64,000 nucleotides of DNA from Macrostomum lignano. Lineage: Eukaryota. The stretch's first letter is position 1; each line of letters starts with the position of its first letter. This document shows positions 67 to 34,104 of the stretch, piece after piece. The position numbers were made by a program, and so were the translations under genes. The notes under the pieces were generated by a model. The model saw only the letters and a list, made by a program, of their open reading frames with translations, had not been told where the DNA came from and did no database searches. The stretch lies in NCBI GenBank assembly GCA_002269645.1, contig NIVC01000010.1:992001-1056000 (forward strand), in the 5' to 3' direction.

Positions 67-320
67 AGTGCAACCCCTGCCCCAGCACCCACCCCCTCCG
101 GAACCCCTGCCCCAGCACCCACCCCCTCCGCAACCCCTGCCCCAGCCCCCACCCCCTCCGCAACCCCTGCCCCAGCACCCACCCCCTCCGCAACCCCTGC
201 CCAGCACCCACCCCCTCCGGAACCCCTGCCCCAGCACCCACCCCTCCGCAACCCCTGCCCCAGCACCCACCCCCTCCGCAACCCCTGCCCCAGCACCCAC
301 CTCCTCCGCAACCCCTGCCG
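67..320 (+). repeat. 30-bp C-rich tandem repeat (GCAACCCCTGCCCCAGCACCCACCCCCTCC) encoding ATPAPAPTPS ahead of the Pol eta core
   Basis: About 8 copies read directly; two copies each lack one C (near 200 and 241). Confidence 0.9.
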
Positions 321-3300
321 CTCCCCCATCTGGCGGAGACAGAGTCATCGCCCTAATCGACATGGACTGTTTCTACGTTCAAGTTGAGCTGCAGCATTGT
401 CCCGAAAGCATTGGCAAGCCGGCTGTAGTTGTTCAATACACTGGCGCCGGCCTCTTAGCCGTGTCCTACGAGGCGCGTGCACTGGGCGTTCGGCGCCACA
501 TGAGGCTGGCAGACGCGCAGCGCATCTGTCCCAGCCTGAAGGTGTTCCAAGTGCCGGAGAAGCGCGGCAAAGCCGACATCTCGCGCTACCGTCAGGCTTC
601 GGACGCCGTCATGTCCGCGCTGAGCCAGTTGAGTACGCAGTTTCAGAAGGCTTCAATTGATGAGGCCTACGTTGACTTGACCGAACGTGTGGACGGCATG
701 CTTGCTGAGTCCAGCGACTCCTGCTTGGACATGCTGAAGCCGGAGCGATTAAAATCTACCTGCATGGCAGTCGGAGGTCAGGAGGCGCTCTCTGATTGGC
801 TCAATAGTGGCCTAGAAACCGCTGCCGGTATGACGCGGGAACAGCGACTTCGGTATCACGATTTGAGACTAGTAGTGGGAGCCTGTCTGGTTGAGGATGT
901 TAGGTGAGTTGATGTGTATGTGAGCGTGTGTATGATGTGTATGTTCGCTACTTACTAACATGTTAATATTCATCACACCTTGTAGGTCCGAAGTTCGAGC
1001 CCGCCTAGGCTACAACTGCAGCGCCGGCTTGGCTGGCACAAAAACTTTAGCTAAAATTAGCGCCGGCGCTAACAAACCCGCGCGGCAAACGTTGGCGCCC
1101 TGGTCGATGGCGCCGGAATTGATGGCGCCGATGCCGCTAGACCGGGTGCCCCGGCTTGGCGGCAAATTGGGCCGAGCAATCAGCGCCCTGCTCGGCGGCA
1201 ATGCCACCGTGGCCGACGTGCTTGCCGCGTCCGAGGCCTCCGTCCTGTCCGCCGAACTCGACTCGGCCAGTGTCCGGTACGCCAGGGAGCTGTGCCGCGG
1301 TATTGACGGCGGCGAGGCTGTTGTGCCTCGATTGGCGCAGACTTCGCTGGGCTGTTCGAAAAATTTCTACGAACCGATTCGCGATTCGGCTACGCTACGG
1401 CGATGGCTGGGCGAACTGGGCGACGAGCTGTTTGAACGGCTGACGCAGGACCGGGTGGAGCATCGGTTAGTGCGCTGGGTGCTTTTGTGTGCCTTGTCTT
1501 ATTAGCTAGTTACTCATCTGTATACCTGTCTGCTTATCTATCTACCTGTCTGCTTATCTACATACCTGCCTACTTATCTACCTACTTGCGTACTTTTCTA
1601 CCTACCTGCCTACTTATCTACCATCCTGCCTACTTATCTACCTACCTGCCTACTTATCTATCTACCTGTCTGCTTATCTACATACCTGCCTACTTATCTA
1701 CCTACTTGCGTACTTGTCTACCTACCTGCCTACTTTTCTACCATCCTGCCTACTTATCTACCTTGCTGCCTACTTATCTACCGTCCTGCCTACTTATCTA
1801 TCTACCTGTCTACTTATCTACCTTCCTGCCTACTTATCTACCTTCCTGCCTACTTATCTACCTTCCTGCCTATTTATCTACCTTCCTGCTTACTTATCTG
1901 CCTTCCTGTCTACTTTTCTACCTTCCTGCCTACTTATCTTCCTATCTGCCTACCTTCTCTACCTTATCTACCTACCTTATGTACTCGTCTACCTGCATTA
2001 CCTGAAATTATGCTGACCTTATCTACCTATCCGCCTACTTTACCCTGTAAAAAATTCGGCTGCTTCTTCGGCGGATTTTTTTGTGCAAAATAGGAGTGGA
2101 ATCTACCGAAATCCCCCCTATCTCACAAGAGTTAAAGAAACCACCCAGGAAGCAGCCGATGTGATCGTAAATTGTGCGGAAACCACCGAAAAATCACCCG
2201 AACCAGTGGCCCATGGGACAACCAGAGAATTATTTACGGTCGATTCCTCGGCGGTTTCTCAGAAAAGCAGGACTGTGAAATGCCGACAAAAAGATGTTTC
2301 AGTTTGGCTGCTCATGACGTTATAAAATGAATGTCCCGATTCTGACCCCCAGAATCTCGCAAGTATTACCCACAGGATTTTGCAATGGTTACCCACCGGA
2401 TCTTATAATTACACAAGAATCTCCTTCTCTGCTGATAGGTCTACCAGAGTTGCCCAAGAATGTCTTATACTTTGAAAGTTAAAATATTAACAATGCGCTT
2501 CGCTTAAATGTTCACAATAGCTGCAAGTCCAGCAACTCGCCTTGTACCTCCACTGGAGGGCCGTCGTTACTGTCACCGGCGGTGTAAATGATTGCCGCCT
2601 GTTCTGCGTCTTCTTGACCCTCCATCCGAACAGGAAGAGCCTTGCGCAGAACGTTGGGACTTGAGGCCAATGGCATTCTTTTTTTCGCCTTCCACTGTTT
2701 TGTGGCAGCTCGGCGAGCCGCGATGACAGCGGCAGGCTTCGCTTTCATCTTCGCCGTAGCCCGGCATTGCTTGAATCCTAGATGGACGTCCTCTTTACCA
2801 GCTGGGATGCCGATGTCGGCACAGAAGAGCTTCATGGCCCTAATTTTTTCTGGACAAGGCGCGTGCATTTCCTGCTCACCGACGCATCGTCCCGAGAAAT
2901 TGGCTGTTAGCAGCTCGTCGCTGCTGAAAACAGCTCGCAACACGGACCTTAAAACCCGGCTTTCCGCCCTCTTCACTGACTTGGCTACAGCATCCAAGTC
3001 GACGGTGTTGGGGTGCGACAGCTTGACTATCCGCAATTGCTCTACGCGCCTGCGGATATCCGTCTGGGGGTCCTTCCTGATTAGGAGTCGCAGTAGTTCC
3101 GGCCGATTGGTGGACAGTGGGACTTCGACGGCACCATCTACAGCAGCCTCGACGCTTTCGGAGGCAGAAGTCGGCATCCTCCCTTCTGATACAGCACCGT
3201 CGCCTGTGCCAGAAATTCCGTTTCTTATCGTCACCGTCATCGGTTCACTGCCGCTCAGGACAGCATTGGCGGCATTTAATGCGTCAGTGAACTCCGAAAG

Positions 3301-6300
3301 CGGCTGCGCCACAGAGCACAGAGCGGAGCGAGCTTCATTAAGCCGCTTTTCGGAGCTCTGAAGCTGCGCGCGGAGGCTTTCATTTTCGGCCTGCAGCTCC
3401 TGGACCTGCAAATCGCAGGCCATTGCACGGTCTTCGTGTGCAGCAACGGACGCCTCGCATTCCATGCGGAGTCGCACCTCTTGAAGGAGCTCGACACCTA
3501 GCAGACAAATGCGACTAAAGATAATGACTTTGTGATCACGCATAAAGGGATTTTTAACAACAGGAAGTTCACTTACGGACGTTGACAACAACACATTGGT
3601 TTTCAAGCAGACTTCGCCTCATGCCGGTGCATCCGTCGCATGCCGACTGCACTTCGATGTCACCGTAGTCAACGGTGGCACAAAGCCGCACCGAGTCATA
3701 CGAGTAAGCAGCCTTTTCGCTGACAAACGGCCCTTTCAGTAGGATTCTGGAGTACAGGGTGCTTCCGGAGCCCGAAGCGCGCACCTCGACCATTGTGCCC
3801 TTGACAAGATGGCCCCCGGACCTCAACCCGTACGCGAACTTGATCTGGCTCTCAGCAGCCACTCCTGTTTTAGATTAGGGGTACTGTACCCCCCACCAGT
3901 ACGGATTGCCGCCTGGTTGCGGCACGAAGGGCTGCCAGACTTCATCGTACCCATCGAGCGGCGACCTAGCAGCACCTGACTTGGGCCTGGTAGATGCGTC
4001 GTATCCTGCGGAGACGGCTGCAGCACCGCCGCCAGCAACAGCAGCACCGGTAGCGGAAGCACCGGAAGTGCAAGCACGGGCAGTAGAAGCACCGGAAGTG
4101 GAAACACCGGTAGCAGCCGCCGCAGTGCCAGCAGCGGCGAGACGCAGCTTGCCACTAAACGCCGAGCTTCTGGGGATGCAAGCGTCAGTAAAATCTAAGC
4201 CATCCCCGCCGCCAGACGAATCGCTCTTCAGCGAAGCAGGTTTATTTTGTGTGGCGGCGGCAGACTTCAAATTCGAAGTAGTTTTCTTTTTTAGGTCCGT
4301 AGTGACTTTCTTCTTCGGCTCGCGAAGGTTGCGTTTGGGCGGCGAGGACGCACTGGCACTTAAAGCAGCTGGCCGCTTTTCATTTTTTTTGCCCATGGCG
4401 TCAAATGGCTGAAATGGATTGGTATAGACAACATGGGCTGGCATAATTCTGTCTGTGAATTCTTGTCTGTGAATTATCTTCTTGTGATGATTTATGACTC
4501 CGATGAATATGAAATATGAATTGATTCAGTCGGAGGAAAAAACATGGAACTGAGGCGATGAAAGTAAGTGGTGTCTAAAGAAGTGAAAAACTCAATACTG
4601 ACATTAACAAACGTCTTAACAGGTGCTAGATCAAAGAGCACAGTAGTAGGGCTTAATGTCTATGTATATATTGCTTTTTTTTCTACCCAATTGACAACAG
4701 TAAGTGGCCGAGCTGAAATTTCATAATGCAGGTGTCATTTGTCAGCTTTCGGGTCAGCATTAGGCTGACGGTCCTTCGACGGACCGGCCGAGGCTCCTTT
4801 TAGAGGCCGCATTCGTCGCTTTCCAACTTTCATATCCGACAACGGCGCTTCTGGTGGAGTGTCAGGCATGTCAATCCGCCAGAAGTTGGGGTCATGCTTC
4901 ATCCTTGGCTGGTTGCACCTGTGCCGACCATGCTGCTGCAGCCTCCGTCGCCTTGACTCCGAAGACAAGTCCGCAAACCAGGCTTCGCAGTCCGGGCAGC
5001 ACTGCGGAGCAAGCTCCTGGCGGTCAGCACGTCGACAGACTGTCGAGATGTAAGCGTACGATGGCCCTTTTTTCTCGGGGAGACGGTTGAAGTCGGCCTT
5101 CATGGCGGCTGAACGGGAACTTTCCAGCTGGGTCGACTGAGCAGCCCCAGAAAAGCCTGCTTTAGAGCAGGCGGAAGGTGGCGATGGCGACCATCTTTGG
5201 CTGTCGGCCAGCAGCTCCTCGGGTCCCTGTGTTTCTGAACCGACATCGGGGTCAGGTTCGTCATCGTGCTCGTCCTCGTCCCAGGCCAGGCCCGCGAACA
5301 GGGATGGCGACTCTGGGTGGACCTGTTTGCCGCGGCTGGCCAGCAGCTCCTCGGGTCCCTGTGTTTCTGAACCGACATCGGGGTCAGGTTCGTCATCGTC
5401 CTCGTCCTCGTCCCAGGCCAGGCCTACGAACAGGGACGTCGGGACGAGTTCGTCGAATATGCGGGACCAATCGGGAGCTTCATCCATTTGCGGCGTAGTT
5501 GCGTAGTGCGCGCTGAAATGGTTTGTGTAATTGTAACAGACGTGTAAGTGAAAGGAGCATGTCAGGATAATGTATGTATACATAGGACTCCTATAGGACT
5601 ACTACTGCCATGCGCTACTCCATTTTCTGACTATGTAGGACGATTAAATTACGACAAACGACTGAAGCTACTGCACTGCATATAAAAAACACCTAAGAGT
5701 AACCGACAAAGATTCACTGGTTTGATGTTTCGAATTTGTTGCATAATTTACAGATGCATTGTTATGCAGTAGTACGGTAAAACAATGAGGGGAATTATTA
5801 CTATTACGAAAAAAAGTAATGCAACGTAAGCTAGCACAGGACGCATTCTGCACACATCGATTTCCCTAAAGTGAAGTAAGTCCGAGACCAGTTAACTGAT
5901 CGAAGTCAAGACGAAACAGTCTGCGCGTGGGGAAGCATAGCTACGGACTGCTCAGTTACAGCGCAGCACGCCACAATCTGCTCAATAGGCGTCTCGCTTG
6001 TTGTAGCCAAGTTCCCAAACGGGGAGCACGTTAGGCGCCGTACATGACTGAGCCGGCATCCGCGATTATCGGAGTCCGGCAAAACGCCTGCAATTGCCCT
6101 CAAGCTGTCGATCTCGGGTTCCTGAACTTCCAAGTCTCGGAGTGTCAAAGTTACGCGTTCTTCTCCTTCTACTAAGCTAATAGCGTCGACTCTGGCAAAT
6201 CGAAAATTCGTAGGCGAGTTTCCGACCAAGTCGACGAAGCAGGACTGCACAGACTTCCTGGCATTGCAGGGGCGAAACACGTCAAATCGCAGCCCGCATT

Positions 6301-9300
6301 GGCGACTGGCAGAAAACCAAGTGACGACGTCACGCTCGCGTCGACCTCGAAGAGTGACATTCCCGACAACGCGGAGCAGCACGCGTCGCTTTTTCTCCGC
6401 AACACAGGGATGCGGGTCGCCGTTCAGTCTTGCCTGCATCAAAGAAATGCGCGTTTCTACGACATGCACCACTTCAATGTCTATGCTGCGAGATCCGCGA
6501 AGTTGATCGCCGACATGTCGATGGAGTCCCTCAAAAAGCGCCGCCGACTGCCGATGAATAGGCCCACCAATGTACGCATGCGCGACCATGTGGCTACAGA
6601 CTTGGTGGGCGTTGTAGGTTAAGGCCTTGATGGAGTATAGTGCCTGTAGCATGCAGTGGAAATGGCGCAGAGTACGATTCACTGCCGGCAATTCGGACAG
6701 TGGGGTCCGTTCGAAGGTGAGCCAAAATGCGGCGCTGGACAGGAGAATAAAATGGTGCCAATAGTCGGCAGGCAGGAAGTTTTCCAAGGCCATTGGGCCG
6801 TAAATGAGTAACCACATTTTGAACTCATGGCCTCTACTTCAGCTCCTTCAGCGACCTCAGTGGCCTTCGTTGGACGCAATGCGGAACGCAAATTGTAGCT
6901 AAAGCTTCGTCGACGAGGTGCCGCCTTGAATGCAGGTCAGGATTGCTTCCTGCCGGGTCCGGCTTCTCGCGCCTTACGCTGAACAACTGTAGCATAACCT
7001 AGCGGAACAGGCCGCTGAGAAGCTGATGGAGATAGCAGGGAGGTGTGCACCTCATGATGTCTAGCCCATGGAGATGGGATAGAGGCGAAGGGCCTTTAAC
7101 GCCCAACGTGTCGGATGTCCGCTGAAACGCGACGGCTGGTCCAAAATTTGTGACGCGGCTCTCTGCAAGCATCGCAGTGTCAGCAGAACATCGAACGGTC
7201 ACCTGTTCGCAGCCAGAGCTGCGTGCAAGATTTAACGTGGACCTCTTTACTTTCACTGGATACACTCGACCTGAGTCGTTCGGTCAAAATGTAACATTTG
7301 TCGCAGCCGTGCTTCGCGTTGAATAGAAATCGGCGGACTCCAACTTGCAACGCAAGATCGCCTGGGTATCGAATACCCAGAGGCATCCGACATCGTCGGA
7401 ATTACACGACGAGCACGTAGCACCTGGTCCTTGAAATCGACCTAGCGAACTGGAACCGCAAGCGTTGCAGACGCAGTGGCACACTGACGTTCCTGAGAAG
7501 GCGCTCATCGTCTTGAGCAGCTTGTTCAATTTGTAGGGCGTTTTGGGTAGCCTACAAGTTGGCATGAAGCAGTGCAAAATTTGCAGAAGCCTTTCGGTGC
7601 TTTTGACAGTCAGCCTAGCGTCCATAATAAAACCCAGCAAGCTGATCACGGCATCCCTGATGCTGACTTCTGAACCGGGGTAGAGCATGACATCCGGTTC
7701 CTCAGCGGACGAGTCATTTATTGTAGCGCAATTGCTACCATGAACGCCACAGTTTCCAGCCCTTGGTCCGCTGTTGTCTCCTTCATATCCTGTGCCACCC
7801 AGAGAGTCCTCGCTGTCCTGACTGTCACCCTCAGAATCGTCATCGCCTCCGCCGTCGCTGTCGCTGTCCTCGGACCCGCCGTCTTTGCTGCCGTCAGAAT
7901 CGTTGTCACCTCCGCCGTCACCGTCGCTGCCCTCACTATCACCGTCGCCTCCGCCGTCGCTGTCGCTGTCCTCGAGCCGCCGTCTTTGCTGCCGTCAGAA
8001 TCGTTGTCACCTCCGCCGTCACCGTCGCTGCCCTCGCTATCACCGTCGCCTCCGCCGTCGCTGTCGCTGACCTCGGAGTCGCTGCCCCCTCTGCCGTCAC
8101 CTTCGCTGCCCTTAGAATCGCCCCCCGCCGCTGCTATCGTCACCCCCAATGCCTGGCCGGCAGAAGGATCATCTTCAGCGTCGTCGCCAGCTCACCTTCA
8201 TTGGTAACCCTTCGTCGCTTTACAGTCTCACATTGGGCTCTTAGCCGATGTCGCCAGGAGCGCACGTTCCGAGCGTGGACGCACCTTCGGCAGTCGCAAT
8301 TTGCAACCTTGCTGTCGCATGCTCTTTCTCGGCTGATGCTAGGCCGACCAACAGGACGCGCCTGCTGAACCACGCCTTTTTGCCTTCGCGTGAACCAGTA
8401 GTCTGTGCGTGATTTCCTTTCCATGAAACGTCTGGCTGGAATGGTGGACATGAAATGGTATCCTACGTTGACGTCATAAACGTCTGACAGAAACGTCATA
8501 ACCATATGTTGGTCTACTGCCGGCAAACTCGTGGTATGGGCCCCTGTATATGATATCCTATTCTGCACCTGAATATTTACACCACGCGTTTAATTAAGAG
8601 TATTGACTCAACGCATAAGAAGCGGAGGGGGAGAAATTGGCAGCTGAGACTGATGTATATGGCGACTTTGTAACTGCCTATGTTATGCACAGCAATGTTC
8701 GTGCGCTATAGCTAACTAACTATACTGTGTTACTTTTACGAAAAGAAACAAATCCTCCGAATGCCTGGCGGCGGCAAGCAAACTCCGAATTGATATTAAA
8801 GTTTATTTACTGCACACGATAATCTACGTGCAAAAAAGCAAGCAAAAGCAATAATTTACAGACTCGTCGCACACAAAAACATAAGCTTAGTCCAGTCAAG
8901 TAATATGAACGTAATATAAAACTGCCTTAAATATTTGGCTGCTTCCTGGGTTGATTCCACTCTGTTCAGGTGATTCTTCGGTTGATTCCATTTCGCCACC
9001 AAGAAGCACCGAGAAACCGCCCAGTTAGGTAGATTCCAAGCAAGGAATCATCCGATTGGTCTGTTTCCAGCGTTCGGCTGTTTCTTTTTCTGGAAACACC
9101 GCAGATTCCAACTGGAATCACCCAAAGAAACATCCCAATTTTTTAGCGGGTATCTACATTATTTACCTATACTTATCCGTCTGCTTAATAACGTACGTAC
9201 TTATCTACCTCCACCCACCCGCCCGCCCACTGCAGCCGCTGGCCCGGCCTACTGTGCGTGGCATTCGGCTGGGATCGGGGCTCTCGCCGGCTCAGCAAAA

Positions 9301-12056
9301 GTCGCCAATTAGCCACAGACTTCTGGCCGGAGGGCCGCGAGCATTTCCTTCGCCTGCTGGAAGCCCTGGTTGATGCTTCCGGCGTCTCAGTTGGTCCGGA
9401 CTCGCCTCTCGGCCATCTGCACGTGTCTGTTGGCAAGTTCCGCAGCCTGGACTGCAGCCTGGGCGAGAATAGAGATATTAAAAGTCTGCTAATGCGACAG
9501 GGTGCTGCTAATGCAGCTCGGTCCACTGCCGCCGCCGCCTCTGCCGGTGCTACGGAAAGCTGTAATCTTGACTATGACGATGGTGCAGTAGCTGATAATA
9601 ATGAAGACAGTTCTAATAGTTCTACAGCTGCTGCTGATGTATCTGCTGATAAGCCAATCAACAAAACTGCCGGTATTCGAAGCTTTTTTACTGCCAGCAC
9701 GTCTGCTGCTAATAATAAAGTTAACTGTGATATCGGACTAGGTGAGCTTGCTATGCTGTTGCATATATTTCAGATATTTGTGTTGCTAATTTTACCCTGT
9801 CACCATTCTTGTTACCCTTTCCCTGTCACCCTCTCTCCCTGTCACCCCCTCTCCCTGTCACCTCTCTCTGTCACCCTCTCTTCCTGTCACCCTCTCCCTG
9901 TCACCCTCTCTTCCTGTCACCTTCTCTCCCTGTCACCCTCTCTCCCTGTCACCCCGTCTCCCTGTCACCCTCTCTCCCTGTCACCCTCTCTTCCTGTCAC
10001 CTTCTCTCCCTGTCACCCTCTCTCCCTGTCACCCTCTCTCCCTGTCACCCTCTCTTCCTGTCACCTTCTCTCCCTGTCACCCTCTCTCCCTGTCACCCTC
10101 TCTCCCTGTCACCCTCTCTCCTTGTCACCCTCTCTCCCTGTCACCCTCTCTCCTTGTCACCCTCTCTTCCTGTCACCTTCTCTTCCTGTCACCTTCTCTC
10201 CCTGTCACCCTCTCTCCCTGTCACCCTCTCTCCCTGTCACCCTCTCTCCCTGTCACCTCTTCCTGTCACCCTCTCTTCTTGTCACCCTCTTTTCCTGTCA
10301 CCCTCTCTCCCTGTCACCCTCTCTCCCTGTCACCCTCTCTCCCTGTCACCTCTTCTTGTCACCCTCTCTTCCTATTGTTGTGTCACTACACGTGATCGAA
10401 ACAGCCCCTAAGAACGCTCTGCAGTGATCGAGCCTGGAGATGGCGTCAGCCCACTGACCGGACTGACTCCGTAACTGAGCGTGGGGTCGCGTCGAGGTAA
10501 GGTAGTCAGTCCGTCCCTGAGGTGTACAGTACCCACTTCGCACGAGGCCCAAATGAGTAATGAATGCAGGCGCAGGTCTTACTTTGATTTCCAATCTGCT
10601 CGACGATGGGCAAGGCAGCGAATTCGTCAATTTGTAGAACTGAGATTCTTGCTGTTGAAGTTTGTAGGTTCTGAAGAGTAGTCTAGTGTCAGGCGTCAAC
10701 AAGCGCGCTCGCCCTGCCCACCGCCAGCAATTCTCTATTTATTTGGACTGCCTGGCGTCAGCCCTAGGGTCTCACGCCAGACAGCATTATCAAAACCCAA
10801 CTTATTGGCCAATCACCAATTGACAAGGGCTAACAAAAGGGGGAGAGAGGGGCCAGACCAGCCAATCCGGCTGGGTACGCATAAAGAAAAGGGGCAGGGC
10901 ATAAGAGCTGATACACAACTGGGGAGGGGGGGTTAGCGCAGGCAGAAATGGGGGGTTGACACAAACAGAATGGGGGGGGGTGGCGCAGGTACGCGGCCAG
11001 GAGGGGTGGGAGTGCAGTGCCGGGCGCACTTGACCGAGAGCCAGAGATTGCTCATCGGTGCAAGTGCACCCGGGCACAACACTATCACACTCTCTTCTTG
11101 TCACCCTCTCTTCCTGTCACCCTCTCTTCCTGTCACCCTCTCTCCCTGTCACTCTCTCTCCTGTCACCCTCTCTCCCTGTCACCTCTTCCTGTCACCCTC
11201 TCTTCTTGTCACCCTCTTTTCCTGTCACCCTCTCTCTCTGTCACCCTCTCTTCCTGTCACCCTCTTTTCCTGTCACCCTCTCTCCCTGTCACCCTCTCTC
11301 CCTGTCACCTCTTCCTGTCACCCTCTCTTCTTGTCACCCTCTCTTCCTGTCACCCTCTCTTCCTGTCACCCTCTCTTCCTGTCACCCTCTCTTCCTGTCA
11401 CCCTCTCTTCTTGTCACCCTCTCTTCCTGTCACCCTCTCTTCCTGTCACCCTCTCTTCCTGTCACCCTCTCTCCCTGTCACCCTCTCTTCCTGTCACCCT
11501 CTTTTCCTGTCACCCTCTCTCCCTGTCACCCTCTCTTCCTGTCACCCTCTCTTCCTGTCACCCTCTCTTCCTGTCACCCTCTCCCTGTCACTTTGTCACT
11601 GTCTCCATTAGCTCTCTCTGCTTGAGTACTGATAATATGCATAAATAATCTTATATAAAAATTGCAGAAGCCGGGGCGGCACCAACACATTCCGTAGCCA
11701 GTGCCCTAGCAGTGCCAAACGATCGACAACAGCAAACAGACCAGCCCAGCAGCAGCAGTGATGAGCCTCTAACAGTGGAATGCAGCCAGTGCCGGCCACC
11801 CCGAGCGGTACTCATGACCGACTGGCTGGAGCATCAAGATTATCACGCCGCTGTTGACTTGCAACGAAGCATCCAATTGGAGTTCAAAGCTGAACGGGAT
11901 CGAGATGTACAGCTGCAGCAGCAGTCGCGCAAAAGACCCGCAACCAGCAGTTCAAGTAGCGCTGGCAAGAACAAGCGTCGAAGTACAACCAGTACTAATA
12001 ATAACTCTTCGTCCGCTAATGGACCAACTCTTGACAGTTATTTTCGTAAAGTTTGA
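68..12056 (+). CDS. POLH: DNA polymerase eta (Y-family); exons <=68-903, 986-1465, 9236-9741, 11668-12056; start codon not identified in window
   Basis: Motifs RVIALIDMDCFYVQVE, AVSYEARALGV, ASIDEAYVDLT, CSAGLAGTKTLAKI. C-terminal UBZ finger (CSQC...EHQDYH), basic NLS and PIP-like TLDSYF at the end. GT-AG junctions at 904/985, 1466/9235 and 9742/11667 are phase-compatible; total 2211 nt from position 68 is in frame. Confidence 0.93.
1505..2042. repeat. ~20-bp minisatellite (TACTTATCTACCTTCCTGCC) in POLH intron 2; resumes at 9151-9210 after the transposon
   Basis: Periodic sequence visible on both sides of the insertion. Confidence 0.9.
2512..3864 (-). CDS. Transposon passenger: coiled-coil plus BEN-like domain protein; exons 3864-3577 and 3497-2512, with a probable upstream exon 4396-3976
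   Basis: Intron 3576-3498 (GTAAGT...CTAG, 79 nt) joins the two ORFs in frame. Heptad-rich LQVQELQAENESLRAQL; BEN-like RSVLRAVFSSDELLTANFSG...PEKIRAM. Confidence 0.65.
3875..4396 (-). CDS. Lys/Ala-rich low-complexity ORF (MGKKNEK...), probably exon 1 of the BEN-like gene
   Basis: ATG at 4396 lies 12 nt after a CCATTTCAG acceptor. A phase-1 donor at 3975 would join the 3864 acceptor in frame, giving a 564-aa model; the donor is weak. Confidence 0.4.
   Translation of the reverse strand: MGKKNEKRPAALSASASSPPKRNLREPKKKVTTDLKKKTTSNLKSAAATQNKPASLKSDSSGGGDGLDFTDACIPRSSAFSGKLRLAAAGTAAAATGVSTSGASTARACTSGASATGAAVAGGGAAAVSAGYDASTRPKSGAARSPLDGYDEVWQPFVPQPGGNPYWWGVQYP
4735..5487 (-). CDS. Transposon passenger: CtIP/Sae2 (RBBP8/Ctp1) C-terminal-domain protein, 250 aa
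   Basis: YAYISTVCRRADRQELAPQCCPDCEAWFAD...GRHR...PNFWRIDMPDT aligns by eye to the CtIP C-terminus (CxxC, RHR, NFW..P.T). Intact ORF from ATG 5487. Confidence 0.8.
   Translation of the reverse strand: MDEAPDWSRIFDELVPTSLFVGLAWDEDEDDDEPDPDVGSETQGPEELLASRGKQVHPESPSLFAGLAWDEDEHDDEPDPDVGSETQGPEELLADSQRWSPSPPSACSKAGFSGAAQSTQLESSRSAAMKADFNRLPEKKGPSYAYISTVCRRADRQELAPQCCPDCEAWFADLSSESRRRRLQQHGRHRCNQPRMKHDPNFWRIDMPDTPPEAPLSDMKVGKRRMRPLKGASAGPSKDRQPNADPKADK
5206..5436. repeat. Two near-identical ~99-bp copies 132 bp apart, encoding an acidic repeat within the CtIP-like ORF
   Basis: 5206-5304 versus 5338-5436; SLFxGLAWDEDExDDEPDPDVGSETQGPEELLA twice. Confidence 0.9.
5906..8568 (-). pseudogene. Disrupted EnSpm/CACTA (Tnp2-family) transposase
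   Basis: Fragments in order: acidic G/D/S tract; LYPGSEVS...LPKTPYKLNKLL...CxxC...CxxC; FNAKHGCDKC; GVKGPSPLSHL...CYLH; WLLIYGPMAL...TYNAHQ...GGP...SAALFEG. Stop at 6999, frameshifts near 6830, 7240, 7330 and 7975, and an apparent internal deletion near 7330. Confidence 0.82.
9795..10371. repeat. 16-17-bp pyrimidine-rich minisatellite (CCTGTCACCCTCTCTC) in POLH intron 3; resumes at 11086-11592
   Basis: Direct periodicity; the long ORFs here are artefacts. Confidence 0.92.
10376..11081. mobile_element. Solo LTR, 706 bp
   Basis: Termini TGTTGTG...CACAACA (perfect 7-bp inverted repeat, TG..CA). 4-bp target duplication CTAT at 10372-10375 and 11082-11085. Splits a minisatellite. Confidence 0.8.
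11086..11592. repeat. Second half of the CTGTCACCCTCTC minisatellite
   Basis: Same unit as 9795-10371. Confidence 0.92.
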
Positions 12057-12394: not shown

Positions 12395-12680
12395 CCCATT
12401 GAATTGGGCCAGATGTGCAACCGACAGCTCAGCCGCAGCTATTGCGCGGCGCATCTGAAGGCTGCGTACGGCTGTTCAGTCCAAGGACTGGGGGGTCGCC
12501 ACACACAGCCTCAATTACCCCAGCTAATGCTGGCACCCATTTTACAGCTGGGCGAACTGTAGCAATGTAGAGTTATGTGTCTTGCTCAAGAACACAAATT
12601 GTTCCGAGTGGGATCGGGAATCGAACCCCCGACGTTCAAGTCGTGAGTCCGACGCTCTAGCCACTAAGCTAAAAACCCCT
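12395..12680 (-). mobile_element. tRNA-derived CORE-type SINE, copy 1
   Basis: Minus strand: A box TAGCTTAGTGG, B box GGTTCGATTCC, then a MIR-core-like segment; similar to the copies at 35.1, 53.0 and 61.0 kb. Confidence 0.85.
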
Positions 12681-13208
12681 AAGAGTCTCGAAAAAGTAGT
12701 CCAAGAGTTGTTGTGTTAGTGCGCTTAACTTTCTACTCACTCAAGTAGTCTGAATAGATTATGTCGTTAAAAAATTCCTCACTTGGGATTTGTCCCTGGA
12801 AGTAGTGATGTCTGGCAAAACAGCCATGACCCCATAGGGCCATGGTCACCGCCCTGATGTGATTGCGGTTATTTTTAATTATTCCAAATGCCATTATGTT
12901 TGTTGCTAGGGTCATAAATCTGCTAAACTAAATACAGTATTCTTGTTGCCATAGCAACCTATTAAATTTTGTCTCCTTAGCAACCACCTTTAAATTATGT
13001 TTTCTTAGCCCTTGAATTTGATAGATAAATATGCTTTTGTTGCCAGGGTCACCAATAATACAGTTTTATTGTTGCCATAGCAACCACCTTTTACTACTGT
13101 TTTCTCAGTGATTAATATAAAGTCGTTTACATAATCATTGATAAATAGGAAGGCCATGTGGTTGTTGCCAGTTTCAGCAGAGCAGCGACCAGCTCACTGC
13201 AGCTCACG

Positions 13209-16200
13209 ATGGCAGTTGTCTCAACAGTAGCGGATGTCTACGACGCCGCATCGGCCATTGGCAAAGATTTCGAACTATTAATCGATCGCTACGGACCCGA
13301 CTGCGTATCCGGCCTCATGCCCAAGGTCATCGGCGTCCTTGAAGAGCTGGAGTCCGTCACCAGCCAGCGCGAGGACGATGCCAGACGCCTGGCGGAGTTG
13401 GAGCGCTGCCAGGAGCGTCTTGACCAGGAGCGACGAGCCAGGCAGTCGGACCGAGCGAGGCACGAACGCGAGCTCGAACAGTCCGAGGATCTTTGGCGAG
13501 GCGAGGCCAAGGACCTCAGCGACGCTCTGGCCAGATGCCAGGAGGAGAACAAGCGGCTGCTGGCTGCCGCCGCCAGCTCGGCATCTCGGAAAGCGGCGGC
13601 AGAGTCGGAGCTGAGCGATGCTACCATCGCGGCTGAGCGAGATGGCGCGGCCAGGCTGCAGCAGATGCCGGATCTGCAGGTACATCTGTAGTGTCCTTTT
13701 CTGAGTTGTTGAGACTGGTTAGCCAAATTGGTTCTACTAAAGAACCGCCTTCATTAAAGTGCCTTGAAAAAATCGCCTTAGCAAGAGAAAAACATCTCCA
13801 TAGCTAGTGGGAATAATCGCCCCCCCCCCTAAAAAAGATAAAAGGAAAAATTGCCTCCCAGAAAAAGCTAGAAGAAAAAATCGCCCCCCTTCTCAAAGAA
13901 GCTGGAATGAAAAATCGCCCCCCCCTCAAAGAAGCTAGAAGGAAAAATCGCCTCCAAAAAGAAGCTAGAAGGAAAAATCGCCCCCCAGAAGAAGCTAAAA
14001 GAAAAAATCGCCTGCAAAAAGAAGGCAGAAGAAAAAATCGCCCCCAGAAGAAACTAGAAGAAAAAATCGCCCCAAAAAAGAAGCTAAAAGGAAAAATCGC
14101 CTTCCTCCCAGAAGAAGCCAGAAGAAAAAATCGCCCCCAGAAGAAATTAGAAGAAAAAATTGCCTTAAAAGAGAAGCTAGAAGGAAAAATCGCCTTCCTC
14201 CCAAAAGAATCTAGAAGGAAAAATCGGCCCCCAAAAAAGCTGGAAGCAAAAATCGCCCCCCAAAAGAAGCTGGAAGGAAAAATCGCCCCCCAAAAGAATC
14301 TAGAAGGAAAAATCGGCCCCCAAAAAAGCTGGAAGGAAAAATCGCCCCCCAGAAGAAGCTGGAAGGAAAAATCGCTCATTAGAGAAATCGCCGTGAGGAA
14401 AAAAGCGAGACAAACCCCACACTGCGCAGGGCATGGCTAAACTGAAAGCCACCATAGAAGCGCAGCGAGACGAAATCCGTCGCTTGCAACGCGATCTGGC
14501 TCAGTGCCAGGCAGATTCTGAGGCTCTCCAGTCGCAGTCGGACCGATTGGCCCGGGCAAACGCCGAGTACAGGCGACGGCACAGCGTCAGCAGCAGGCAG
14601 GCCCAGCGACTGTTGGAGAGCCAAGCAGATCTCGAAGCTCGCCTGGCGGCCAGCGACCAGGCACTGCGGCTGGCCGCGGAGGCCGGCACCGCTGCGGATG
14701 GGTGCGCCGATGCGGTGAGGCTTTTTCTGGAATGTTTATGGATGGGACTGTTTAGTGACTGTTTATGGGGCTGTTTGTGACTGTTTATGGGGCTGTTTGT
14801 GACTGTTTATGCGGCTGTTTATAGGGCTGTTTAGTGACTGTTTATGGAGCTGTTTATGGGGTAGTTTATAGGGCTGTTTATGGGGCTGTTTATGGGGTTG
14901 CTTATAGGGCTGTTTATGTGACTGTTTATGGGGCTGTTTATTTGACTGTTTATGGTGCTGTTTATTTGACTGTTTATGTGGCTGTTTATAGGACTGTTTA
15001 TGGAATGCTTACGTTGCCGTTTCTGGGACTTTTATGAGGCTGTTTAAGGAACTGTTTATGAGGCTGTTTACCGGTATGGGACTGTTTATAAGAATGTTTA
15101 TAAAAATGGCTTCCCTCTGAGGCTGTTATGAGCAAGTTATTTTGATCTTGATGATGCTGCCGAGCCAAGACAAGTAGAAGAGTACTTCGTAGAACGGAAC
15201 GGCCCGAGGTTAACGCTTGTTGGCCAAACTCCAAGGCTCAGGAGTGTACATGTCCGACAATAAAAGAGTCAGCTGGGCCGCTGTACACTCTGTATGAGCG
15301 AGTATGCGTGTAAGTTATATACTTACGATTTTACATACTTTTTTTCACTTTTTAAGGCCACTCAAACAGCTGGTCAGGATGCATCAGGCGTTGCTGGCGT
15401 CTCAGATTCTCAAACAGAATTGAAGCCTTCTTCTCCTGAAACTGCTGCTGCCAGCAAGGACTCTGGGCAGACTCACCAGGTTTGGTCTTTGACTGCTGTG
15501 GGGGATGAGGAAGGGTGAGATGGAGGTAAAAGAGGAATGAGATGTAGGGAGAAGAGGGGTGAAATTGAGGGAGAAGAAGGGTGAGATGTAGGGAGAAGAG
15601 GTTGAAATAGAGTGAGAAGAGACAGATAGAGGGAGAAGACGGGTGAGATGGAGGCAGAAGAGGCTGAAATAGAGGGAGAAGAAGGTTAAGATGGAGGGAG
15701 AAGAGGGGTGAGATGTAGGGAGAAGAGGCTGAGATGGAGGGAGAAGAGGGGTGAGATAGAGGGAGAAGACGGGTGAGATGGAGGCAGAAGAGGCTGAAAT
15801 AGAGGGAGAAGAAGGTTAATATGGAGGGAGAAGAGGGTGAGATGTAGGGAGAAGAGGGGTGAGATGGAGGGAAAAGAGGGGTGAGATAGAGGGAGAAGAG
15901 GGGTGAGATGGAGGGAGAAGAGGCTGAGATGGAGGGAGAAGAGGGGTGAGATGGAGGGAAAAGAGGCTGAGATGGAGGGAGAAGAGGGGTAAGATGGAGG
16001 GAGAAGAGGGGTGAGATGGGGGAGAAGAGGGGTGAGATAGAGGGAGAAGAGGGGTGAGATGGAGGGAGAAGAGGGGTGAGATGGGGGAGAAGAGGGGTGA
16101 GATAGAGGGAGAAGAGGGCTGAGATGGAGGGAGAAGAGGCTGAGATGGAGGGAGAAGAGGGGTGAGATGGAGGGAGAAGAGGGGTGAGATGGGGGGAGAA

Positions 16201-21691: not shown

Positions 21692-24600
21692 ATGGCAAGC
21701 GACAGCAGCGGGATCAACATCTCCGGTCGCGACTGCACCAGCGATGCATTCAACGACAACGACTATTGCTTGACAACGGATGAGTACATTGGCGAGATTC
21801 TGGCCTACCTGAGGCCCACAGTCTATGAGATTGTGTTGCTATGCCTGTACTGCATTGTACTGCTAGCTGGCCTGCTTGGCAACGCCCTGGTGATAGCGGC
21901 TGTGCTGCGCAAGCAGACAATGCGGACAGCCACTAATATGTTTCTTGTGAACTTGGCGCTGGCCGACTTCCTGGTGATTCTGTTGTGCCTGGTGCCAACC
22001 GTCATTGAGGATGTGATGGAGAGCTGGTTGTTTGGAGACGCAGCCTGTCGGGTGCTTAAATACTTGCAGGTAACAAACTCCCTTTTTAAACAGAATGTCA
22101 ATTCAGAAACTGATGCAGACGCAAGGGGTGACGACTGAATGCTTGAGAGACCACACCAGCTGAAGGTCCAGAAGCTCCAACGTGACGAACGAAGTCAGAT
22201 CTGATGCAGACACGTGATGGGCGTTCTATGAAATTTTGAGGCTTTACAAGACCGCCCTGAGGCCGCAGTCGTATTGAATACACTGGCGCTTATGGGAAAA
22301 ATGTGACCTGGCAGAATTGTTGAATATCTCGACGATTCGGAGGGCTGGCGACTTGATTGGCTCGTGTTTGTGTGCCTGCATTGCTCCGTTGATCCGGCGC
22401 AGCAAAAACGTCAGGGAGGGGAGGGTTATTCCCCTCTGGTAGTTCTATTCTTAGAAGCCTCTCAGCTTCTAGAAAGTCCTTTTAGTACGGGGTTTTCTTT
22501 GGGAGCACGAGAATTTCTTGCAGTGAGGTTTTCCCGGATGGTTTCTTGCCAGTTGGAATTTCAAATCAAATCCAGTCTATAGACAATGCTGGACTAGATT
22601 AGAACTAGACTAGACTAGACATAAACTAGACTAGATTAGAACTAGACTAGACTAGACATAAACTAGACTAGACATAAACTAGACTAGATTAGAACTAGAC
22701 TAGACTAGACATAAACTAGACTAGACTAGTCATAAACTAGACTAGATTATAACTAGACTAGACTAGTCATAAACTAGACTAGACTAGTCATAAACTAGAC
22801 TAGACCAGACATAAACTAGACTAGATTAGAACTAGACTAGACATAAACTAGACTAGATTAGAACTAGACTAGACTAGACATAAACTAGACTAGATTAGAA
22901 CTAGACTAGACTAGACATAAACTAGACTAGATTAGAACTAGACTAGACTAGACATAAACTAGACTAGATTAGAACTAGACTAGACTAGACATAAACTAGA
23001 CTAGACTAGTCATAAACTAGACTAGATTATAACTAGACTAGATTAGAACTAGACTAGACTAGTCATAAACTAGACTAGACTAGTCATAAACTAGACTAGA
23101 CCAGACATAAACTAGACTAGATTAGAACTAGACTAGACATAAACTAGACTAGATTAGAACTAGACTAGACATAAACTAGACTAGATTAGAACTAGACTAG
23201 ACTAGACATAAACTAGACTAGATTAGAACTAGACTAGACTAGACATAAACTAGACTAGATTAGAACTAGACTAGACTAGACATAAACTAGACTAGATTAG
23301 AACTAGACAAGACTAGACATAAACTAGACTAGATTAGAACTAGACTAGACTAGACATAAACTAGACTAGATTAGAACTAGACTAGACTAGTCATAAACTA
23401 GACTAGATTAGAACTAGACAAGACTAGACATAAACTAGACTAGATTAGAACTAGACTAGACTAGACATAAACTAGACTAGATTAGAACTAGACTAGACTA
23501 GTCATAAACTAGACTAGATTAGAACTAGACAAGACTAGACATAAACTAGACTAGATTAGAACTAGACAAGACTAGACATAAACTAGACTAGATTTGACTT
23601 GAAATTCCGACTGAAAGAACCTTGCGGAAAAACCTGCGGGAAAGACCCTTTTCTTTTTGAGTTGAATCGGTTAAATGTAAGGAAAATTAGTCTATTAGAA
23701 ACTTCTGGCTCCGTCAACTGAGTTTTAAAGGTTCTGTTCAATGTAAAAAAGTGTTTATCTTCAAATTGCATTTCTGAAACTCAATTAAGGCAGCTCTATG
23801 AATTGTATGAACTCAAAAAAATCAATACCGTTTAAATTTAGAGATAATATCTACTCGCATGAGAGAGATTGCCGCAGACAGCGCACTCTCGGTACAACAG
23901 ACAGCTCATTCGATGACTTACGTTGACTTTCCTATCGTCAGTCAGACATGAGAATTAGCATGTCAGAATATGTCAGAAACAGACTCTCTTCCTAAAGCTA
24001 TACATAGTGCAGCATTAGCTTTCTATTTGTTCGGGCAGGTCCCAATGCAAGGACCACAAAAAAATAGAGCTGTTGCAAAAGGATCTTGTCAGTTTTAGAC
24101 TGAAACTTCATTTTTCACAGACATGTCCCTGTAATTATACAAACTGCAGCACGCATCAGATCTTTTTTATACTCAGCTCCGTACTGGAATGCATTTAGCT
24201 ATACTTTTGGCTTCCTGTGGAAAAATTTCTGCAGAAATTTCTTTTGCCTTCTTTCTCATACTGCAGCGGCAACTGGATCAAAATACTAGCAGTTTTACGG
24301 GCATATTTTTGATGAAGCCACTATTTAGGCCATGTCCCACATTTAGCGAGGAAAAAATTCTAGACCTTTTATAGTGTTAATCCGCAAGACTGGTTCGCTT
24401 TCTGCAACACCCACGGCTCTTGCTTGTAGCTATCTGAAGCGTAAATACAGAGACACAACCAGTCTACCCAGCTTTCAACCACAAAGCCATTGCAAATTGA
24501 AGGCCTGAAAATTTACTAATCTTCTCTGCGCTAATCCACCACTCACGGCGGGCGGTTCGTTTTGATGCCGCAAACTGCCGCGATTTAAGCGCTGGCAACG

Positions 24601-34009: not shown

Positions 34010-34104
34010 GTTACTCTGTCTACATGCATCTGTCTGTCTTAGTGTCTGTCTCTGTCTTGTCTGTCTTAGTGTCTGTATGTCTGTCTCCGTCTTGTCTGTC
34101 TCTG

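What the first reader, a model, noticed from the sequence alone, without database searches (positions are those of the whole stretch)
4735..5487. A DNA transposon carries its own CtIP/Sae2-like end-processing gene
Seen: an intact 250-aa ORF inside the TIR-bounded element whose C-terminus matches the conserved CtIP domain (CxxC, RHR, NFW..P.T). It lacks CtIP's N-terminal coiled coil and has an acidic repeat instead. Known: Sae2/CtIP acts with Mre11 complexes to open hairpin-capped and protein-blocked DNA ends. hAT and RAG/Transib transposases leave hairpins on flanking DNA, and CACTA excision footprints are usually read the same way. Inference: the element captured a host repair factor to resolve its excision site, or to divert or block MRN. 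I know of no described transposon-encoded CtIP module.
Basis: partly seen in the sequence, partly recalled or inferred. Interest (0 to 1): 0.92.

Follow-up and report, generated by a model that had tools for sequence, protein, structure and literature searches.

The report
Transposon copy carrying a mini-CtIP gene
A 7.1-kb cut-and-paste transposon copy sitting in an intron of a flatworm DNA polymerase eta gene carries an intact gene whose tail is a well-preserved copy of the part of the DNA-repair factor CtIP that talks to the Mre11-Rad50 nuclease; this is unusual, but it rests on one copy.

Summary
The minus-strand ORF 5487..4735 (250 aa) is intact. Its C-terminal ~100 aa are a real SAE2/CtIP domain: Pfam PF08573 scores 27.5 bits against a cut-off of 19.8, and CPDC, RHR, NFW and PDTP are all present. 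There is no N-terminal coiled coil; two 33-aa acidic repeats take its place.

The ORF lies inside a 7,108-bp insertion (2043..9150). The insertion has CCC-starting inverted ends, shared subterminal motifs and a TA duplication, as in animal CACTA-like "TRC" elements. It sits antisense in an intron of a DNA polymerase eta gene.

The closest relative of the domain is the host CtIP of the flatworm Macrostomum lignano (60% identity, shared derived residues). That gene lies at an ordinary, different locus and has a coiled coil. Synonymous sites are saturated, yet the transposon-borne domain has changed no faster than the host gene. It is therefore constrained, not decaying.

Three things weaken the case. 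I could find no second copy. The transposase-like ORFs lack any recognisable catalytic domain. The source species is inferred, not known.

A role in excision-site repair or MRN diversion is untested. Verdict: partly supported, a new variant of host-gene capture by a transposon.

The parts
2041..2042 (.). Left copy of the TA target-site duplication
   Evidence: TA lies directly outside CCC... at the left end and ...GGG at the right end. Joining the flanks gives ...GCCTACTT-TA-TCTAC..., which fits the 20-bp microsatellite unit TACCTGCCTACTTATCTACC that the element interrupts, apart from one extra T.
2043..2078 (+). Left terminal inverted repeat, CCCTGTAAAAAATTCGGCTGCTTCTTCGGCGGATTT
   Evidence: It matches the reverse complement of 9115-9150 at 16 of the first 20 positions and 27 of 36. 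This pairing and its neighbouring registers (offset by 1-3 bases) are the only ones of 1.21 million 36-mer pairs tested around the two ends to reach 27/36. CCC termini with a 2-bp TSD are the signature of animal CACTA-like TRC elements (PMC1636069).
2079..2260 (+). Left subterminal region with motifs shared, inverted, with the right end
   Evidence: GAGTGGAATC(T/A)ACC, ACCCAGGAAGCAGCC (15-mer) and GGCGGTTTCTC (11-mer) occur within about 220 bp of both ends in inverted orientation. GGAATC[ATG][AG]CC occurs only near the ends.
2512..3606 (-). Last ORF of the element (364 aa): long coiled-coil helix followed by an all-helical region
   Evidence: The frame is open with a coding-like GC1/GC2/GC3 pattern of 0.62/0.44/0.59. 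AlphaFold predicts a confident helix at residues 20-117 and the rest at low confidence. No Pfam, PDB or CtIP similarity was found. Its function is unknown; a DNA-binding TnpA-like role is only a guess.
3875..4444 (-). ORF of 189 aa, basic and low-complexity; internal ATG (MGKKNEKRP...) follows a splice-acceptor-like motif
   Evidence: The GC pattern of 0.57/0.63/0.53 is not clearly coding. The motif ATCCATTTCAGC lies at 4419..4408.
4735..5487 (-). CtIP-like ORF, 250 aa including start, TGA stop at 4737..4735
   Evidence: The GC1/GC2/GC3 pattern of 0.66/0.51/0.64 resembles host exons in the window.
4798..5097 (-). SAE2/CtIP C-terminal domain (aa 131-230): CPDC, RHR, NFW, PDTP, KRRMRP
   Evidence: It is 60/100 identical to the last exon of M. 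lignano CtIP (L002 12737-13036), BLASTP E=9e-34. The Pfam SAE2 hit covers nt 4858-4956. Motif positions are, conservation, and the relative-rate test.
5206..5441 (-). Tandem in-frame duplication (132-nt spacing) encoding two acidic repeats SLF[V/A]GLAWDEDE[D/H]DDEPDPDVGSETQGPEELLA
   Evidence: No significant similarity to host CtIP outside the C-terminal domain.
5512..5523 (-). Splice-acceptor-like motif AACCATTTCAG|C, 26 nt upstream of the ORF's ATG
   Evidence: The pattern AWCCATTTCAGC has exactly two exact matches in the 64-kb window. Both are in the element, both on the minus strand, and each lies just upstream of an ATG-started ORF. That it is used as a cis- or trans-splice acceptor is an inference.
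5909..6838 (-). Transposase-like C-terminal open frame (310 codons)
   Evidence: The only homologue found is P0001 (E=3e-46, 43% identity), an exon on a 1.4-kb metagenome contig. There is no Pfam hit. Its resemblance to the H..H/GP/FE region of CACTA-type transposases is recalled from memory and was not tested.
7002..7994 (-). Upstream transposase-like pieces (94 and 236 codons) with a CxC..C / C..C zinc-ribbon-like segment and an acidic G/D/S-rich repeat region
   Evidence: There is no Transposase_21 hit, no D-G-x3-F...W-P motif I and no D.MH motif anywhere in the element. The pieces are separated by stop codons and a frame change.
8143..8589 (-). First open frame of the element (149 codons), cysteine/arginine-rich, unassigned
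   Evidence: no Pfam hit.
8935..9114 (-). Right subterminal region with the shared motifs
9115..9150 (-). Right terminal inverted repeat; its reverse complement reads CCCGCTAAAAAATTGGGATGTTTCTTTGGGTGATTC
9151..9152 (.). Right copy of the TA target-site duplication
68..12056 (+). Host DNA polymerase eta gene whose intron holds the element. Exons include about 335-907 and about 990-1490 (IMS, HhH, start of IMS_C) and 11712-12056 (UBZ zinc finger).
   Evidence: Pfam IMS at 2e-29, POLH-Rev1_HhH and IMS_C; zf_UBZ at 1.5e-6; homologues are DNA polymerase eta at up to 44% identity.

Best explanation
The region 2043..9150 is one copy of a cut-and-paste DNA transposon of the animal CACTA-like (TRC, CMC-superfamily) kind. 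It is inserted antisense into an intron of a flatworm (Macrostomum) DNA polymerase eta gene. Among its minus-strand ORFs is a chimeric gene. Its C-terminal 100 aa are a host-lineage CtIP/Sae2 domain, the part of CtIP that docks on RAD50 and switches on the Mre11 endonuclease. This domain is joined to a new, disordered N-terminus with two acidic repeats, in place of CtIP's tetramerising coiled coil. The domain has stayed under about the same purifying selection as the host CtIP, so it probably makes a working protein. My proposed mechanism is inferred, not shown. The protein would be a small, probably monomeric, RAD50-binding CtIP mimic, possibly expressed from the element's transcription unit through the acceptor-like site at 5513. 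It would either locally license Mre11 cutting at ends made by transposition, or compete with host CtIP for MRN. This copy lacks a recognisable catalytic transposase domain and is probably not autonomous.
For: - **Domain identity:** Pfam SAE2 scores above its cut-off. There are 49 phmmer hits, mostly identifiable as RBBP8/CtIP, the best at 3.5e-25. All motifs are present and 9 of 10 highly conserved columns are kept.
- **Inside a transposon:** The TIR pair is the unique best in its neighbourhood, with CCC ends and a TA TSD. Subterminal motifs are confined to both ends. The flanks rebuild the interrupted microsatellite. The CCC-plus-2-bp signature is described for SmTRC1 and insect TRC elements, which also carry extra downstream ORFs expressed by alternative splicing (PMC1636069).
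- **Host-lineage origin:** The nearest relative is M. lignano CtIP (60/100 identical). The two share derived states: CCPDCEAWFADLS, G before RHR, and M before P.T.
- **Separate host gene:** In M. lignano the CtIP gene, with an N-terminal coiled coil, lies between an acetyl-CoA synthetase gene and an EMP24 gene at two homeologous or allelic loci. There is no synteny with the window.
- **Likely species:** The window shares a tRNA-derived SINE family and another repeat family with those M. lignano contigs. Identities between window and M. lignano copies (74-88%) match those within each genome (77-91% in the window, 83% in L002).
- **Constraint:** pS is 0.83 (saturated) against pN 0.32. In the Tajima relative-rate test, 12 changes are unique to the window ORF and 11 to the host gene (outgroup P0003), or 8 against 8 using the family consensus. 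Mean identity to 47 outgroups is 29.4% against 28.9%. The window ORF passes the Pfam SAE2 cut-off, while the host protein gives no hit at E<=0.01.
- **Plausibility of a mini-CtIP:** The RAD50-binding part of S. pombe Ctp1 is confined to its last 17 aa. It almost coincides with a 15-aa C-terminal peptide that the cited paper's title describes as stimulating Mre11 endonuclease. The phospho-acceptor equivalent to CtIP T847 docks on RAD50 (bioRxiv 10.1101/2023.03.25.534200, citing Zdravkovic 2021). The ORF keeps that threonine as T210-P.
Against: - Only one copy was seen. There is none elsewhere in the window, none in 15 billion proteins by exact look-up or as a close phmmer hit, and none in two metagenome scans.
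- The transposase-like ORFs have no Pfam Transposase_21 or DUF4218 hit and lack the catalytic motifs. The superfamily assignment therefore rests on the termini, the TSD and a remembered motif resemblance.
- The TIRs are only 75% identical, whereas active SmTRC1 copies have perfect 54-bp TIRs.
- The source species is inferred from shared repeats. If it is a distant Macrostomum, the divergence from M. lignano CtIP could simply be species divergence after a recent capture. The constraint would then say nothing about life inside the transposon.
- CtIP's tetramerising coiled coil, known from the literature to matter for its function in cells, is absent.
- There are no expression data.
- In yeast, Ac/Ds excision hairpins are opened mainly by Pso2 (PMC3299998).
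Confidence: 0.55

Rival explanations
1. Passive, recent capture of a gene fragment (Pack-type transduplication). The element picked up the 3' end of its own host's CtIP gene not long ago. The ORF is open only because it is young, and it has no function for the element or the host.
For: CACTA-type elements are known to capture and move chromosomal gene fragments (Pack-CACTA, PMC6379663, seen). Only the last ~100 aa resemble CtIP. The other long ORFs of the element are also open, which fits a young copy. The source species is not proven to be M. lignano, and no Macrostomum polymerase eta was found for comparison.
Against: If the window is M. lignano or a close relative, as the shared SINE and other repeats suggest, the ORF is saturated at synonymous sites against the host gene. 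Yet it has changed no faster in protein and keeps every motif. A functionless fragment would not do this. No closer CtIP-like protein that could be the donor exists in the searched collection.
Confidence: 0.22
2. A host gene rather than a transposon gene. The ORF is a host CtIP paralogue, or a domesticated remnant, that now serves the host. The surrounding element is an old, dead vehicle, or the apparent boundaries mislead.
For: It appears single-copy as far as could be searched. The transposase looks dead and the TIRs are imperfect, while the CtIP domain is as constrained as the host gene. A possible acceptor site lies directly upstream of the ATG, and in M. lignano this could serve trans-splicing (from memory).
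Against: The ORF lies well inside an insertion with TIRs, a TSD and subterminal motifs. The other element ORFs are also long and open, which is not expected if only this gene were kept. It lacks the coiled coil that host CtIP proteins carry.
Confidence: 0.18
3. Chance ORF with a spurious domain match.
For: The Pfam match covers only 33 profile positions. The region is GC-rich, and overlapping ORFs of about 100 aa exist in other frames.
Against: phmmer E=3.5e-25 against 1.84 billion proteins, 60% identity over 100 aa to a bona fide CtIP, and all motifs in register. An open frame of this length appeared in 1 of 200 shuffles.
Confidence: 0.01

Closest known systems
Host CtIP/RBBP8/Sae2/Ctp1, specifically Macrostomum lignano Mlig004387 (PAA54340/PAA88737)
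   Same: The C-terminal domain has CxxC, RHR, NF(W/F) and P.T motifs and a basic KRR.RPL tail. It is 60% identical over 100 aa, with shared lineage-specific residues, and the stop codon falls shortly after the domain.
   Different: It has no N-terminal coiled coil and no significant similarity outside the domain. It is 250 aa against at least 481. It lies inside a transposon in a polymerase eta intron instead of the ACAS-CtIP-EMP24 locus. It has a duplicated acidic N-terminus.
SmTRC1 and other animal CACTA-related (TRC) transposons (DeMarco et al. 2006, PMC1636069)
   Same: TIRs begin with CCC and the TSD is 2 bp. The element is several kb long, sits in an intron, and has extra ORFs downstream of the transposase. 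In SmTRC1 these ORFs are reached by alternative splicing and resemble nothing known.
   Different: SmTRC1 has a recognisable Transposase_21 domain and perfect 54-bp TIRs. This copy has neither. No TRC element is reported there to carry a CtIP domain.
Pack-CACTA / Pack-MULE gene-fragment capture
   Same: A TIR element carries a piece of a host gene fused to unrelated sequence (PMC6379663).
   Different: Pack elements are non-coding vehicles whose captured fragments usually decay. Here the element also has transposase-like ORFs, and the captured domain is as constrained as the host gene.
Helitron-encoded RPA-like proteins (from memory: Kapitonov and Jurka 2001)
   Same: A host DNA-metabolism factor is taken up and kept as an accessory gene of a DNA transposon.
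   Different: The transposon class is different (rolling-circle), as is the factor. The Helitron RPA genes are seen in many copies and species, whereas only one copy was seen here.
Ctp1 C-terminal 15-aa peptide and RAD50-binding competitor motifs (MIN/iDDR)
   Same: Short C-terminal CtIP-family segments bind RAD50 by themselves, and such a peptide is reported to stimulate Mre11. Unrelated short motifs that bind the same RAD50 surface block MRN.
   Different: Those are experimental fragments or telomere proteins. Nothing has been measured for this ORF.

Membership tests
SAE2/CtIP C-terminal domain family (Pfam PF08573) | Profile match above the curated gathering score | tested here: met
   27.5 bits against a cut-off of 19.8, E=7.1e-6.
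SAE2/CtIP C-terminal domain family (Pfam PF08573) | Conserved CxxC, RHR, NFW and P.T (phospho-acceptor) motifs in register | tested here: met
   CPDC 164-167, RHR 188-190, NFW 201-203 and PDTP 208-211. The ORF keeps 9 of the 10 columns conserved at 90% or more.
Full-length CtIP/Ctp1/Sae2 orthologue | N-terminal coiled-coil oligomerisation domain | tested here: not met
   No CtIP_N or coiled-coil hit was found and the N-terminus is acidic and proline-rich. The host protein P0051 and P0003 do have a coiled coil.
Full-length CtIP/Ctp1/Sae2 orthologue | Binds MRN (RAD50/NBS1) and stimulates Mre11 endonuclease | not testable with these tools
   This needs binding and nuclease assays.
Animal CACTA-like (TRC / CMC superfamily) DNA transposon | Terminal inverted repeats starting CCC (animal) or CACTA (plant) | tested here: met
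   CCCTGTAAAAAATT... and CCCGCTAAAAAATT..., 27/36 identical, the unique best pair. The definition is from PMC1636069.
Animal CACTA-like (TRC / CMC superfamily) DNA transposon | 2-bp (2-3 bp) target-site duplication | tested here: met
   TA on both sides, and the flanks rebuild the microsatellite.
Animal CACTA-like (TRC / CMC superfamily) DNA transposon | Transposase with a Transposase_21 (DDE) domain | tested here: not met
   No Pfam hit even at E<=10 on joined pieces, and neither motif I nor D.MH was found. This copy is at best a defective member.
Animal CACTA-like (TRC / CMC superfamily) DNA transposon | Subterminal repeated motifs near both ends | tested here: met
   Shared 10- to 15-mers are confined to about 220 bp at each end.
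Animal CACTA-like (TRC / CMC superfamily) DNA transposon | Multiple copies in the genome, and empty sites | not testable with these tools
   The source genome is not searchable here. No second copy was found in the window or in the collections.
Pack-type gene-capturing transposon | Carries a fragment of a host gene between the TIRs | tested here: met
   Host-lineage CtIP C-terminal domain.
Pack-type gene-capturing transposon | Non-autonomous, without transposase-coding sequence; the captured piece evolves without constraint | tested here: not met
   Transposase-like ORFs are present. The captured domain shows no rate acceleration against the host gene.

The most novel reading that the evidence does not exclude
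A living CACTA-like transposon family in Macrostomum flatworms has kept, over a long time, its own mini-CtIP as an accessory gene. This would be a monomeric RAD50-binding module, expressed by alternative or trans-splicing from the element. It would steer the host Mre11-Rad50-Nbs1 nuclease at the breaks made by excision or integration, either licensing end processing or blocking resection. It would be the first transposon-encoded regulator of DSB end resection.
Probability: 0.15. Interest if true: 0.85.

Novelty: new variant of a known kind. Interest (0 to 1): 0.55.

Why it matters
Cut-and-paste transposons depend on host double-strand-break repair to heal the donor site and often to copy themselves back. 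Very few are known to bring their own repair factor. CtIP is the switch that commits a break to resection and homologous recombination. A transposon-borne CtIP module that binds RAD50 would be a direct handle on how a mobile element biases repair choice. It would also be a natural minimal CtIP for studying MRN activation. If it proves to be a host paralogue born by transposon capture, it is still a clean case of a repair-gene domain duplicated and rebuilt by a transposon. Macrostomum is a regeneration and radiation-tolerance model, which adds interest. My searches of the paper library found no report of a transposon-encoded CtIP. This shows only that the library holds none.

Tried and rejected
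- **Word-indexed homologue search with the whole ORF:** no hits, probably because acidic low-complexity words swamped it. The full phmmer search succeeded.
- **Exact look-ups:** ten or more window ORFs were looked up in the gene-position index and the 15-billion-protein collection. None is on record, so the source assembly could not be reached.
- **Two metagenome scans:** one used the transposase-like profile and one the CtIP-domain profile. Neither found anything.
- **Contexts of other short CtIP-like hits:** P0003, P0014 and P0001 lie on contigs of 0.9-1.6 kb with no informative neighbours. The short RBBP8-like proteins of scallop, thrips and spider looked like partial models of ordinary CtIP genes, not transposon genes.
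- **Could the downstream coiled-coil ORF (2512-3606) be the missing CtIP N-terminus?** No similarity was found.
- **Does similarity to host CtIP extend into the acidic repeats?** An EPD..GSET resemblance is visible by eye but is not significant.
- **Structure prediction of the coiled-coil ORF:** only the long helix was confident, so no fold search was run on it.
- **PDB sequence searches:** nothing useful.
- **My idea that the C-terminus of the 364-aa ORF is a BEN domain:** this comes from memory only and Pfam does not support it.
- **Synteny between the window and the M. lignano CtIP locus:** none.
- **Rfam:** nothing.
- **Literature search for Academ/XPG as a precedent:** it returned only false matches, so I do not cite that precedent.
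Full report
**Observation**

It runs from ATG 5487 to TGA 4737..4735 on the minus strand and is 250 codons long. The open frame is 287 codons stop to stop.

Pfam's SAE2/CtIP C-terminus model (PF08573) matches it at 27.5 bits, above the curated cut-off of 19.8, with E=7.1e-6. A full phmmer search of 1.84 billion representative proteins gave 49 hits at E<=1e-3. Of those I looked up or scanned, most are named or recognisable RBBP8/CtIP proteins of animals.

In an alignment with 45 other CtIP-family domains, the ORF keeps 9 of the 10 columns that are at least 90% conserved.

The N-terminal 129 residues have no coiled-coil or CtIP_N match. They contain two 33-residue acidic repeats made by an in-frame 132-nt tandem duplication.

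**Surroundings**

All the long ORFs between about 2.0 and 9.2 kb are on the minus strand. The plus-strand flanks are exons of a DNA polymerase eta gene:
- IMS, HhH and the start of IMS_C lie before position 1,500.
- The UBZ zinc finger lies at 11712-12056.
- Homologues are DNA polymerase eta.

The block is therefore an antisense insertion in an intron.

Its ends are inverted repeats, TA|CCCTGTAAAAAATTCGG… at 2043 and …CCCAATTTTTTAGCGGG|TA at 9150. They match at 16 of the first 20 positions and 27 of 36. This pairing, with its neighbouring registers, is the only one of 1.21 million 36-mer pairs tested around the two ends to reach 27/36. Both ends are flanked by TA.

Joining the flanks rebuilds, apart from one extra T, the 20-bp microsatellite unit that the element interrupts. 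Within about 220 bp of each end there are shared motifs in inverted orientation, including a 15-mer and an 11-mer. The GGAATC.RCC motif occurs only near the ends.

The combination of CCC termini, a 2-bp duplication, a size of several kb, an intron location and extra downstream ORFs matches the description of SmTRC1. That element is from the flatworm Schistosoma mansoni, and related animal elements of the CACTA superfamily share the same features (PMC1636069). The CtIP-like ORF lies in the middle of this 7,108-bp element. I found no sign of a nested insertion around it.

**The transposase**

Three open pieces (7994..7287, 7283..7002 and 6838..5909) look to me like parts of a CACTA-type transposase. 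That resemblance is from memory and is not a test. Pfam gives no Transposase_21, DUF4218 or other transposase hit, even on the joined pieces at E<=10. The published motif I (D-G-x3-F…W-P) and a D.MH motif are absent from all six frames.

The only homologue found is a single exon on a 1.4-kb metagenome contig. I conclude that this copy is probably not autonomous. The superfamily assignment rests mainly on the termini and the duplication.

**Origin of the CtIP domain**

The best hit is a Macrostomum lignano protein: P0002, 395 aa, with a longer form P0051 of 481 aa that has an N-terminal coiled coil. It is 60/100 identical over the domain. The two share residues that differ from most other CtIPs: CCPDCEAWFADLS, G before RHR, and M before P.T. 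No significant similarity exists outside the domain.

In M. lignano the gene lies between an acetyl-CoA synthetase gene and an EMP24 gene, at two homeologous or allelic loci. Nothing in the window is syntenic with that locus.

The window shares a tRNA-derived SINE family and another repeat family with those M. lignano contigs. Identities between window and M. lignano copies (74-88%) fall in the same range as those within each genome (77-91% in the window, 83% in L002). This suggests the window comes from M. lignano or a close relative, but does not prove it. No Macrostomum polymerase eta was found for a direct check.

**Is the domain decaying?**

Against the M. lignano exon, synonymous differences are saturated (pS 0.83) while pN is 0.32. 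A relative-rate test does not depend on knowing the species, and it shows no acceleration:
- With P0003 as outgroup, 12 changes are unique to the window ORF and 11 to the host gene.
- With the family consensus as outgroup, the counts are 8 and 8.
- Mean identity to 47 outgroups is 29.4% for the window ORF and 28.9% for the host gene.

The window ORF passes the Pfam SAE2 cut-off, whereas the host protein gives no hit at E<=0.01. The domain has therefore been under about the same protein-level constraint as a bona fide CtIP since the two lineages split.

If the window is M. lignano or a near relative, the ORF is a long-lived paralogue kept by selection. If it is a distant species, the same numbers could arise from a recent capture of that species' own CtIP. 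This is the main uncertainty, and I could not resolve it.

**Expression clues**

The ORF has the GC1>GC2<GC3 pattern of the host exons in the window. The 12-mer A[A/T]CCATTTCAGC has exactly two exact matches in the window. Both are in the element, on the minus strand, and each lies just upstream of an ATG: at 5513, 26 nt before the CtIP-like ORF, and at 4409, before MGKKNEKRP….

They look like 3' splice sites. Alternative splicing to downstream ORFs is what SmTRC1 and plant Spm do. Their use here is an inference.

**Mechanism**

The literature read here makes three relevant points (bioRxiv 10.1101/2023.03.25.534200):
- The RAD50-binding part of Ctp1 is confined to its last 17 residues. It almost coincides with a 15-residue C-terminal peptide that the cited Zdravkovic 2021 title describes as stimulating Mre11 endonuclease.
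- The threonine equivalent to CtIP T847 docks on RAD50.
- Unrelated motifs that bind the same RAD50 surface shut MRN down.

The ORF keeps that threonine (T210, followed by proline), together with RHR and NFW. My best reading is that it encodes a small RAD50-binding CtIP mimic without the oligomerisation domain. Whether it activates Mre11 at transposon-made ends or competes with host CtIP cannot be decided from sequence.

There, Pso2 accounted for more than 95% of hairpin repair. The loss of revertants in mre11 and sae2 mutants could not be separated from their end-joining role (PMC3299998).

**What is missing**

I found no second copy of the element or the ORF:
- none in the window;
- none by exact look-up;
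- none as a close phmmer hit;
- none in two metagenome scans.

The source genome itself could not be searched with these tools. The TIRs are only 75% identical, whereas active SmTRC1 copies have perfect TIRs. Against that, four open frames of 236-368 codons argue that the copy is not very old.

**Comparison and verdict**

The ORF is a member of the SAE2/CtIP C-terminal domain family, because the profile and all motifs were tested and met. It is not a full-length CtIP orthologue, because the coiled coil was tested and not met.

The element fits animal CACTA-like TRC transposons in its termini, duplication and subterminal motifs. It fails the transposase-domain test, so this copy is best called a defective member.

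It resembles Pack-type capture in carrying a host gene piece. It differs in having transposase-like ORFs and a constrained passenger.

My searches found no paper describing a transposon-encoded CtIP. I rate it a new variant of a known kind: host-gene capture by a DNA transposon, like the RPA genes of Helitrons (from memory). It is of moderate-to-good interest, and a copy census in the source genome is the decisive next step.

Noticed in passing
window 12402-12680, 35102-35371, 53024-53310, 60972-61261: Four copies of a ~280-bp tRNA-derived SINE (B-box GGTTCGATTC). They are 74-88% identical to copies on the Macrostomum lignano contigs L002 and L005. This was my main clue to the source organism.
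   Followed up: partly
window 40873-41300 (vs L002 7903-8306, L005 8525-8886): A second interspersed repeat family shared with the M. lignano contigs at 76-78% identity. It was not classified.
   Followed up: no
window 4408-4419 and 5512-5523 (minus strand): The 12-mer A[A/T]CCATTTCAGC occurs exactly twice in 64 kb. Both copies are inside the element and each lies just upstream of an ATG-started ORF. They may be alternative or trans-splice acceptors.
   Followed up: partly
window 9150-9260: The right end of the element lies only about 65-110 bp upstream of where the next polymerase eta exon seems to begin, so the insertion could affect splicing of that intron. The exact exon boundary was not determined.
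   Followed up: no
window 1523-1984, 9820-10373, 11085-11591: Long 16- to 20-bp microsatellite-like arrays fill the polymerase eta introns. They produce long spurious ORFs in several frames. The element inserted into the degenerate continuation of the first array, about 60 bp beyond where TRF ends it.
   Followed up: partly
window 25563-28606, 32114-33152, 15352-16564, 34020-34634: Large minisatellite arrays give artefactual ORFs of up to 990 aa on both strands.
   Followed up: no
window 22812-23557 (minus strand): ARAGORN calls five tandem tRNA-like genes (four 'Pyl' CTA, one Ile TAT) about 100-230 bp apart. Rfam reports nothing at gathering score. They are probably a repeat array of tRNA-like units rather than real tRNA genes.
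   Followed up: no
window 58885-60801 (+): An apparently intronless 638-aa carboxylesterase-family protein (Pfam COesterase, 2e-99) with a signal-peptide-like start and a C-terminal membrane span. Where the catalytic GESAG serine motif is expected it reads GLDAG, so it may be a non-catalytic, neuroligin-like protein.
   Followed up: partly
window 13158-13691 (+) and 28831-29391 (+): An exon with a RILP-homology RH1 domain (6e-25), and a rhodopsin-family GPCR fragment (2e-13). Both are ordinary host genes next to the polymerase eta gene.
   Followed up: partly
window 7701-8191 (minus strand): A G/D/S-rich acidic repeat region (39- and 101-bp tandem repeats, up to 96% matches) sits at the N-terminal side of the transposase-like ORF. 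The CtIP-like ORF also begins with acidic repeats.
   Followed up: no
P0002 / L002 12737-13036 (M. lignano host CtIP): The host CtIP of M. lignano has NFF instead of the nearly invariant NFW and gives no Pfam SAE2 hit at E<=0.01. The transposon-borne copy keeps NFW and passes the cut-off.
   Followed up: partly
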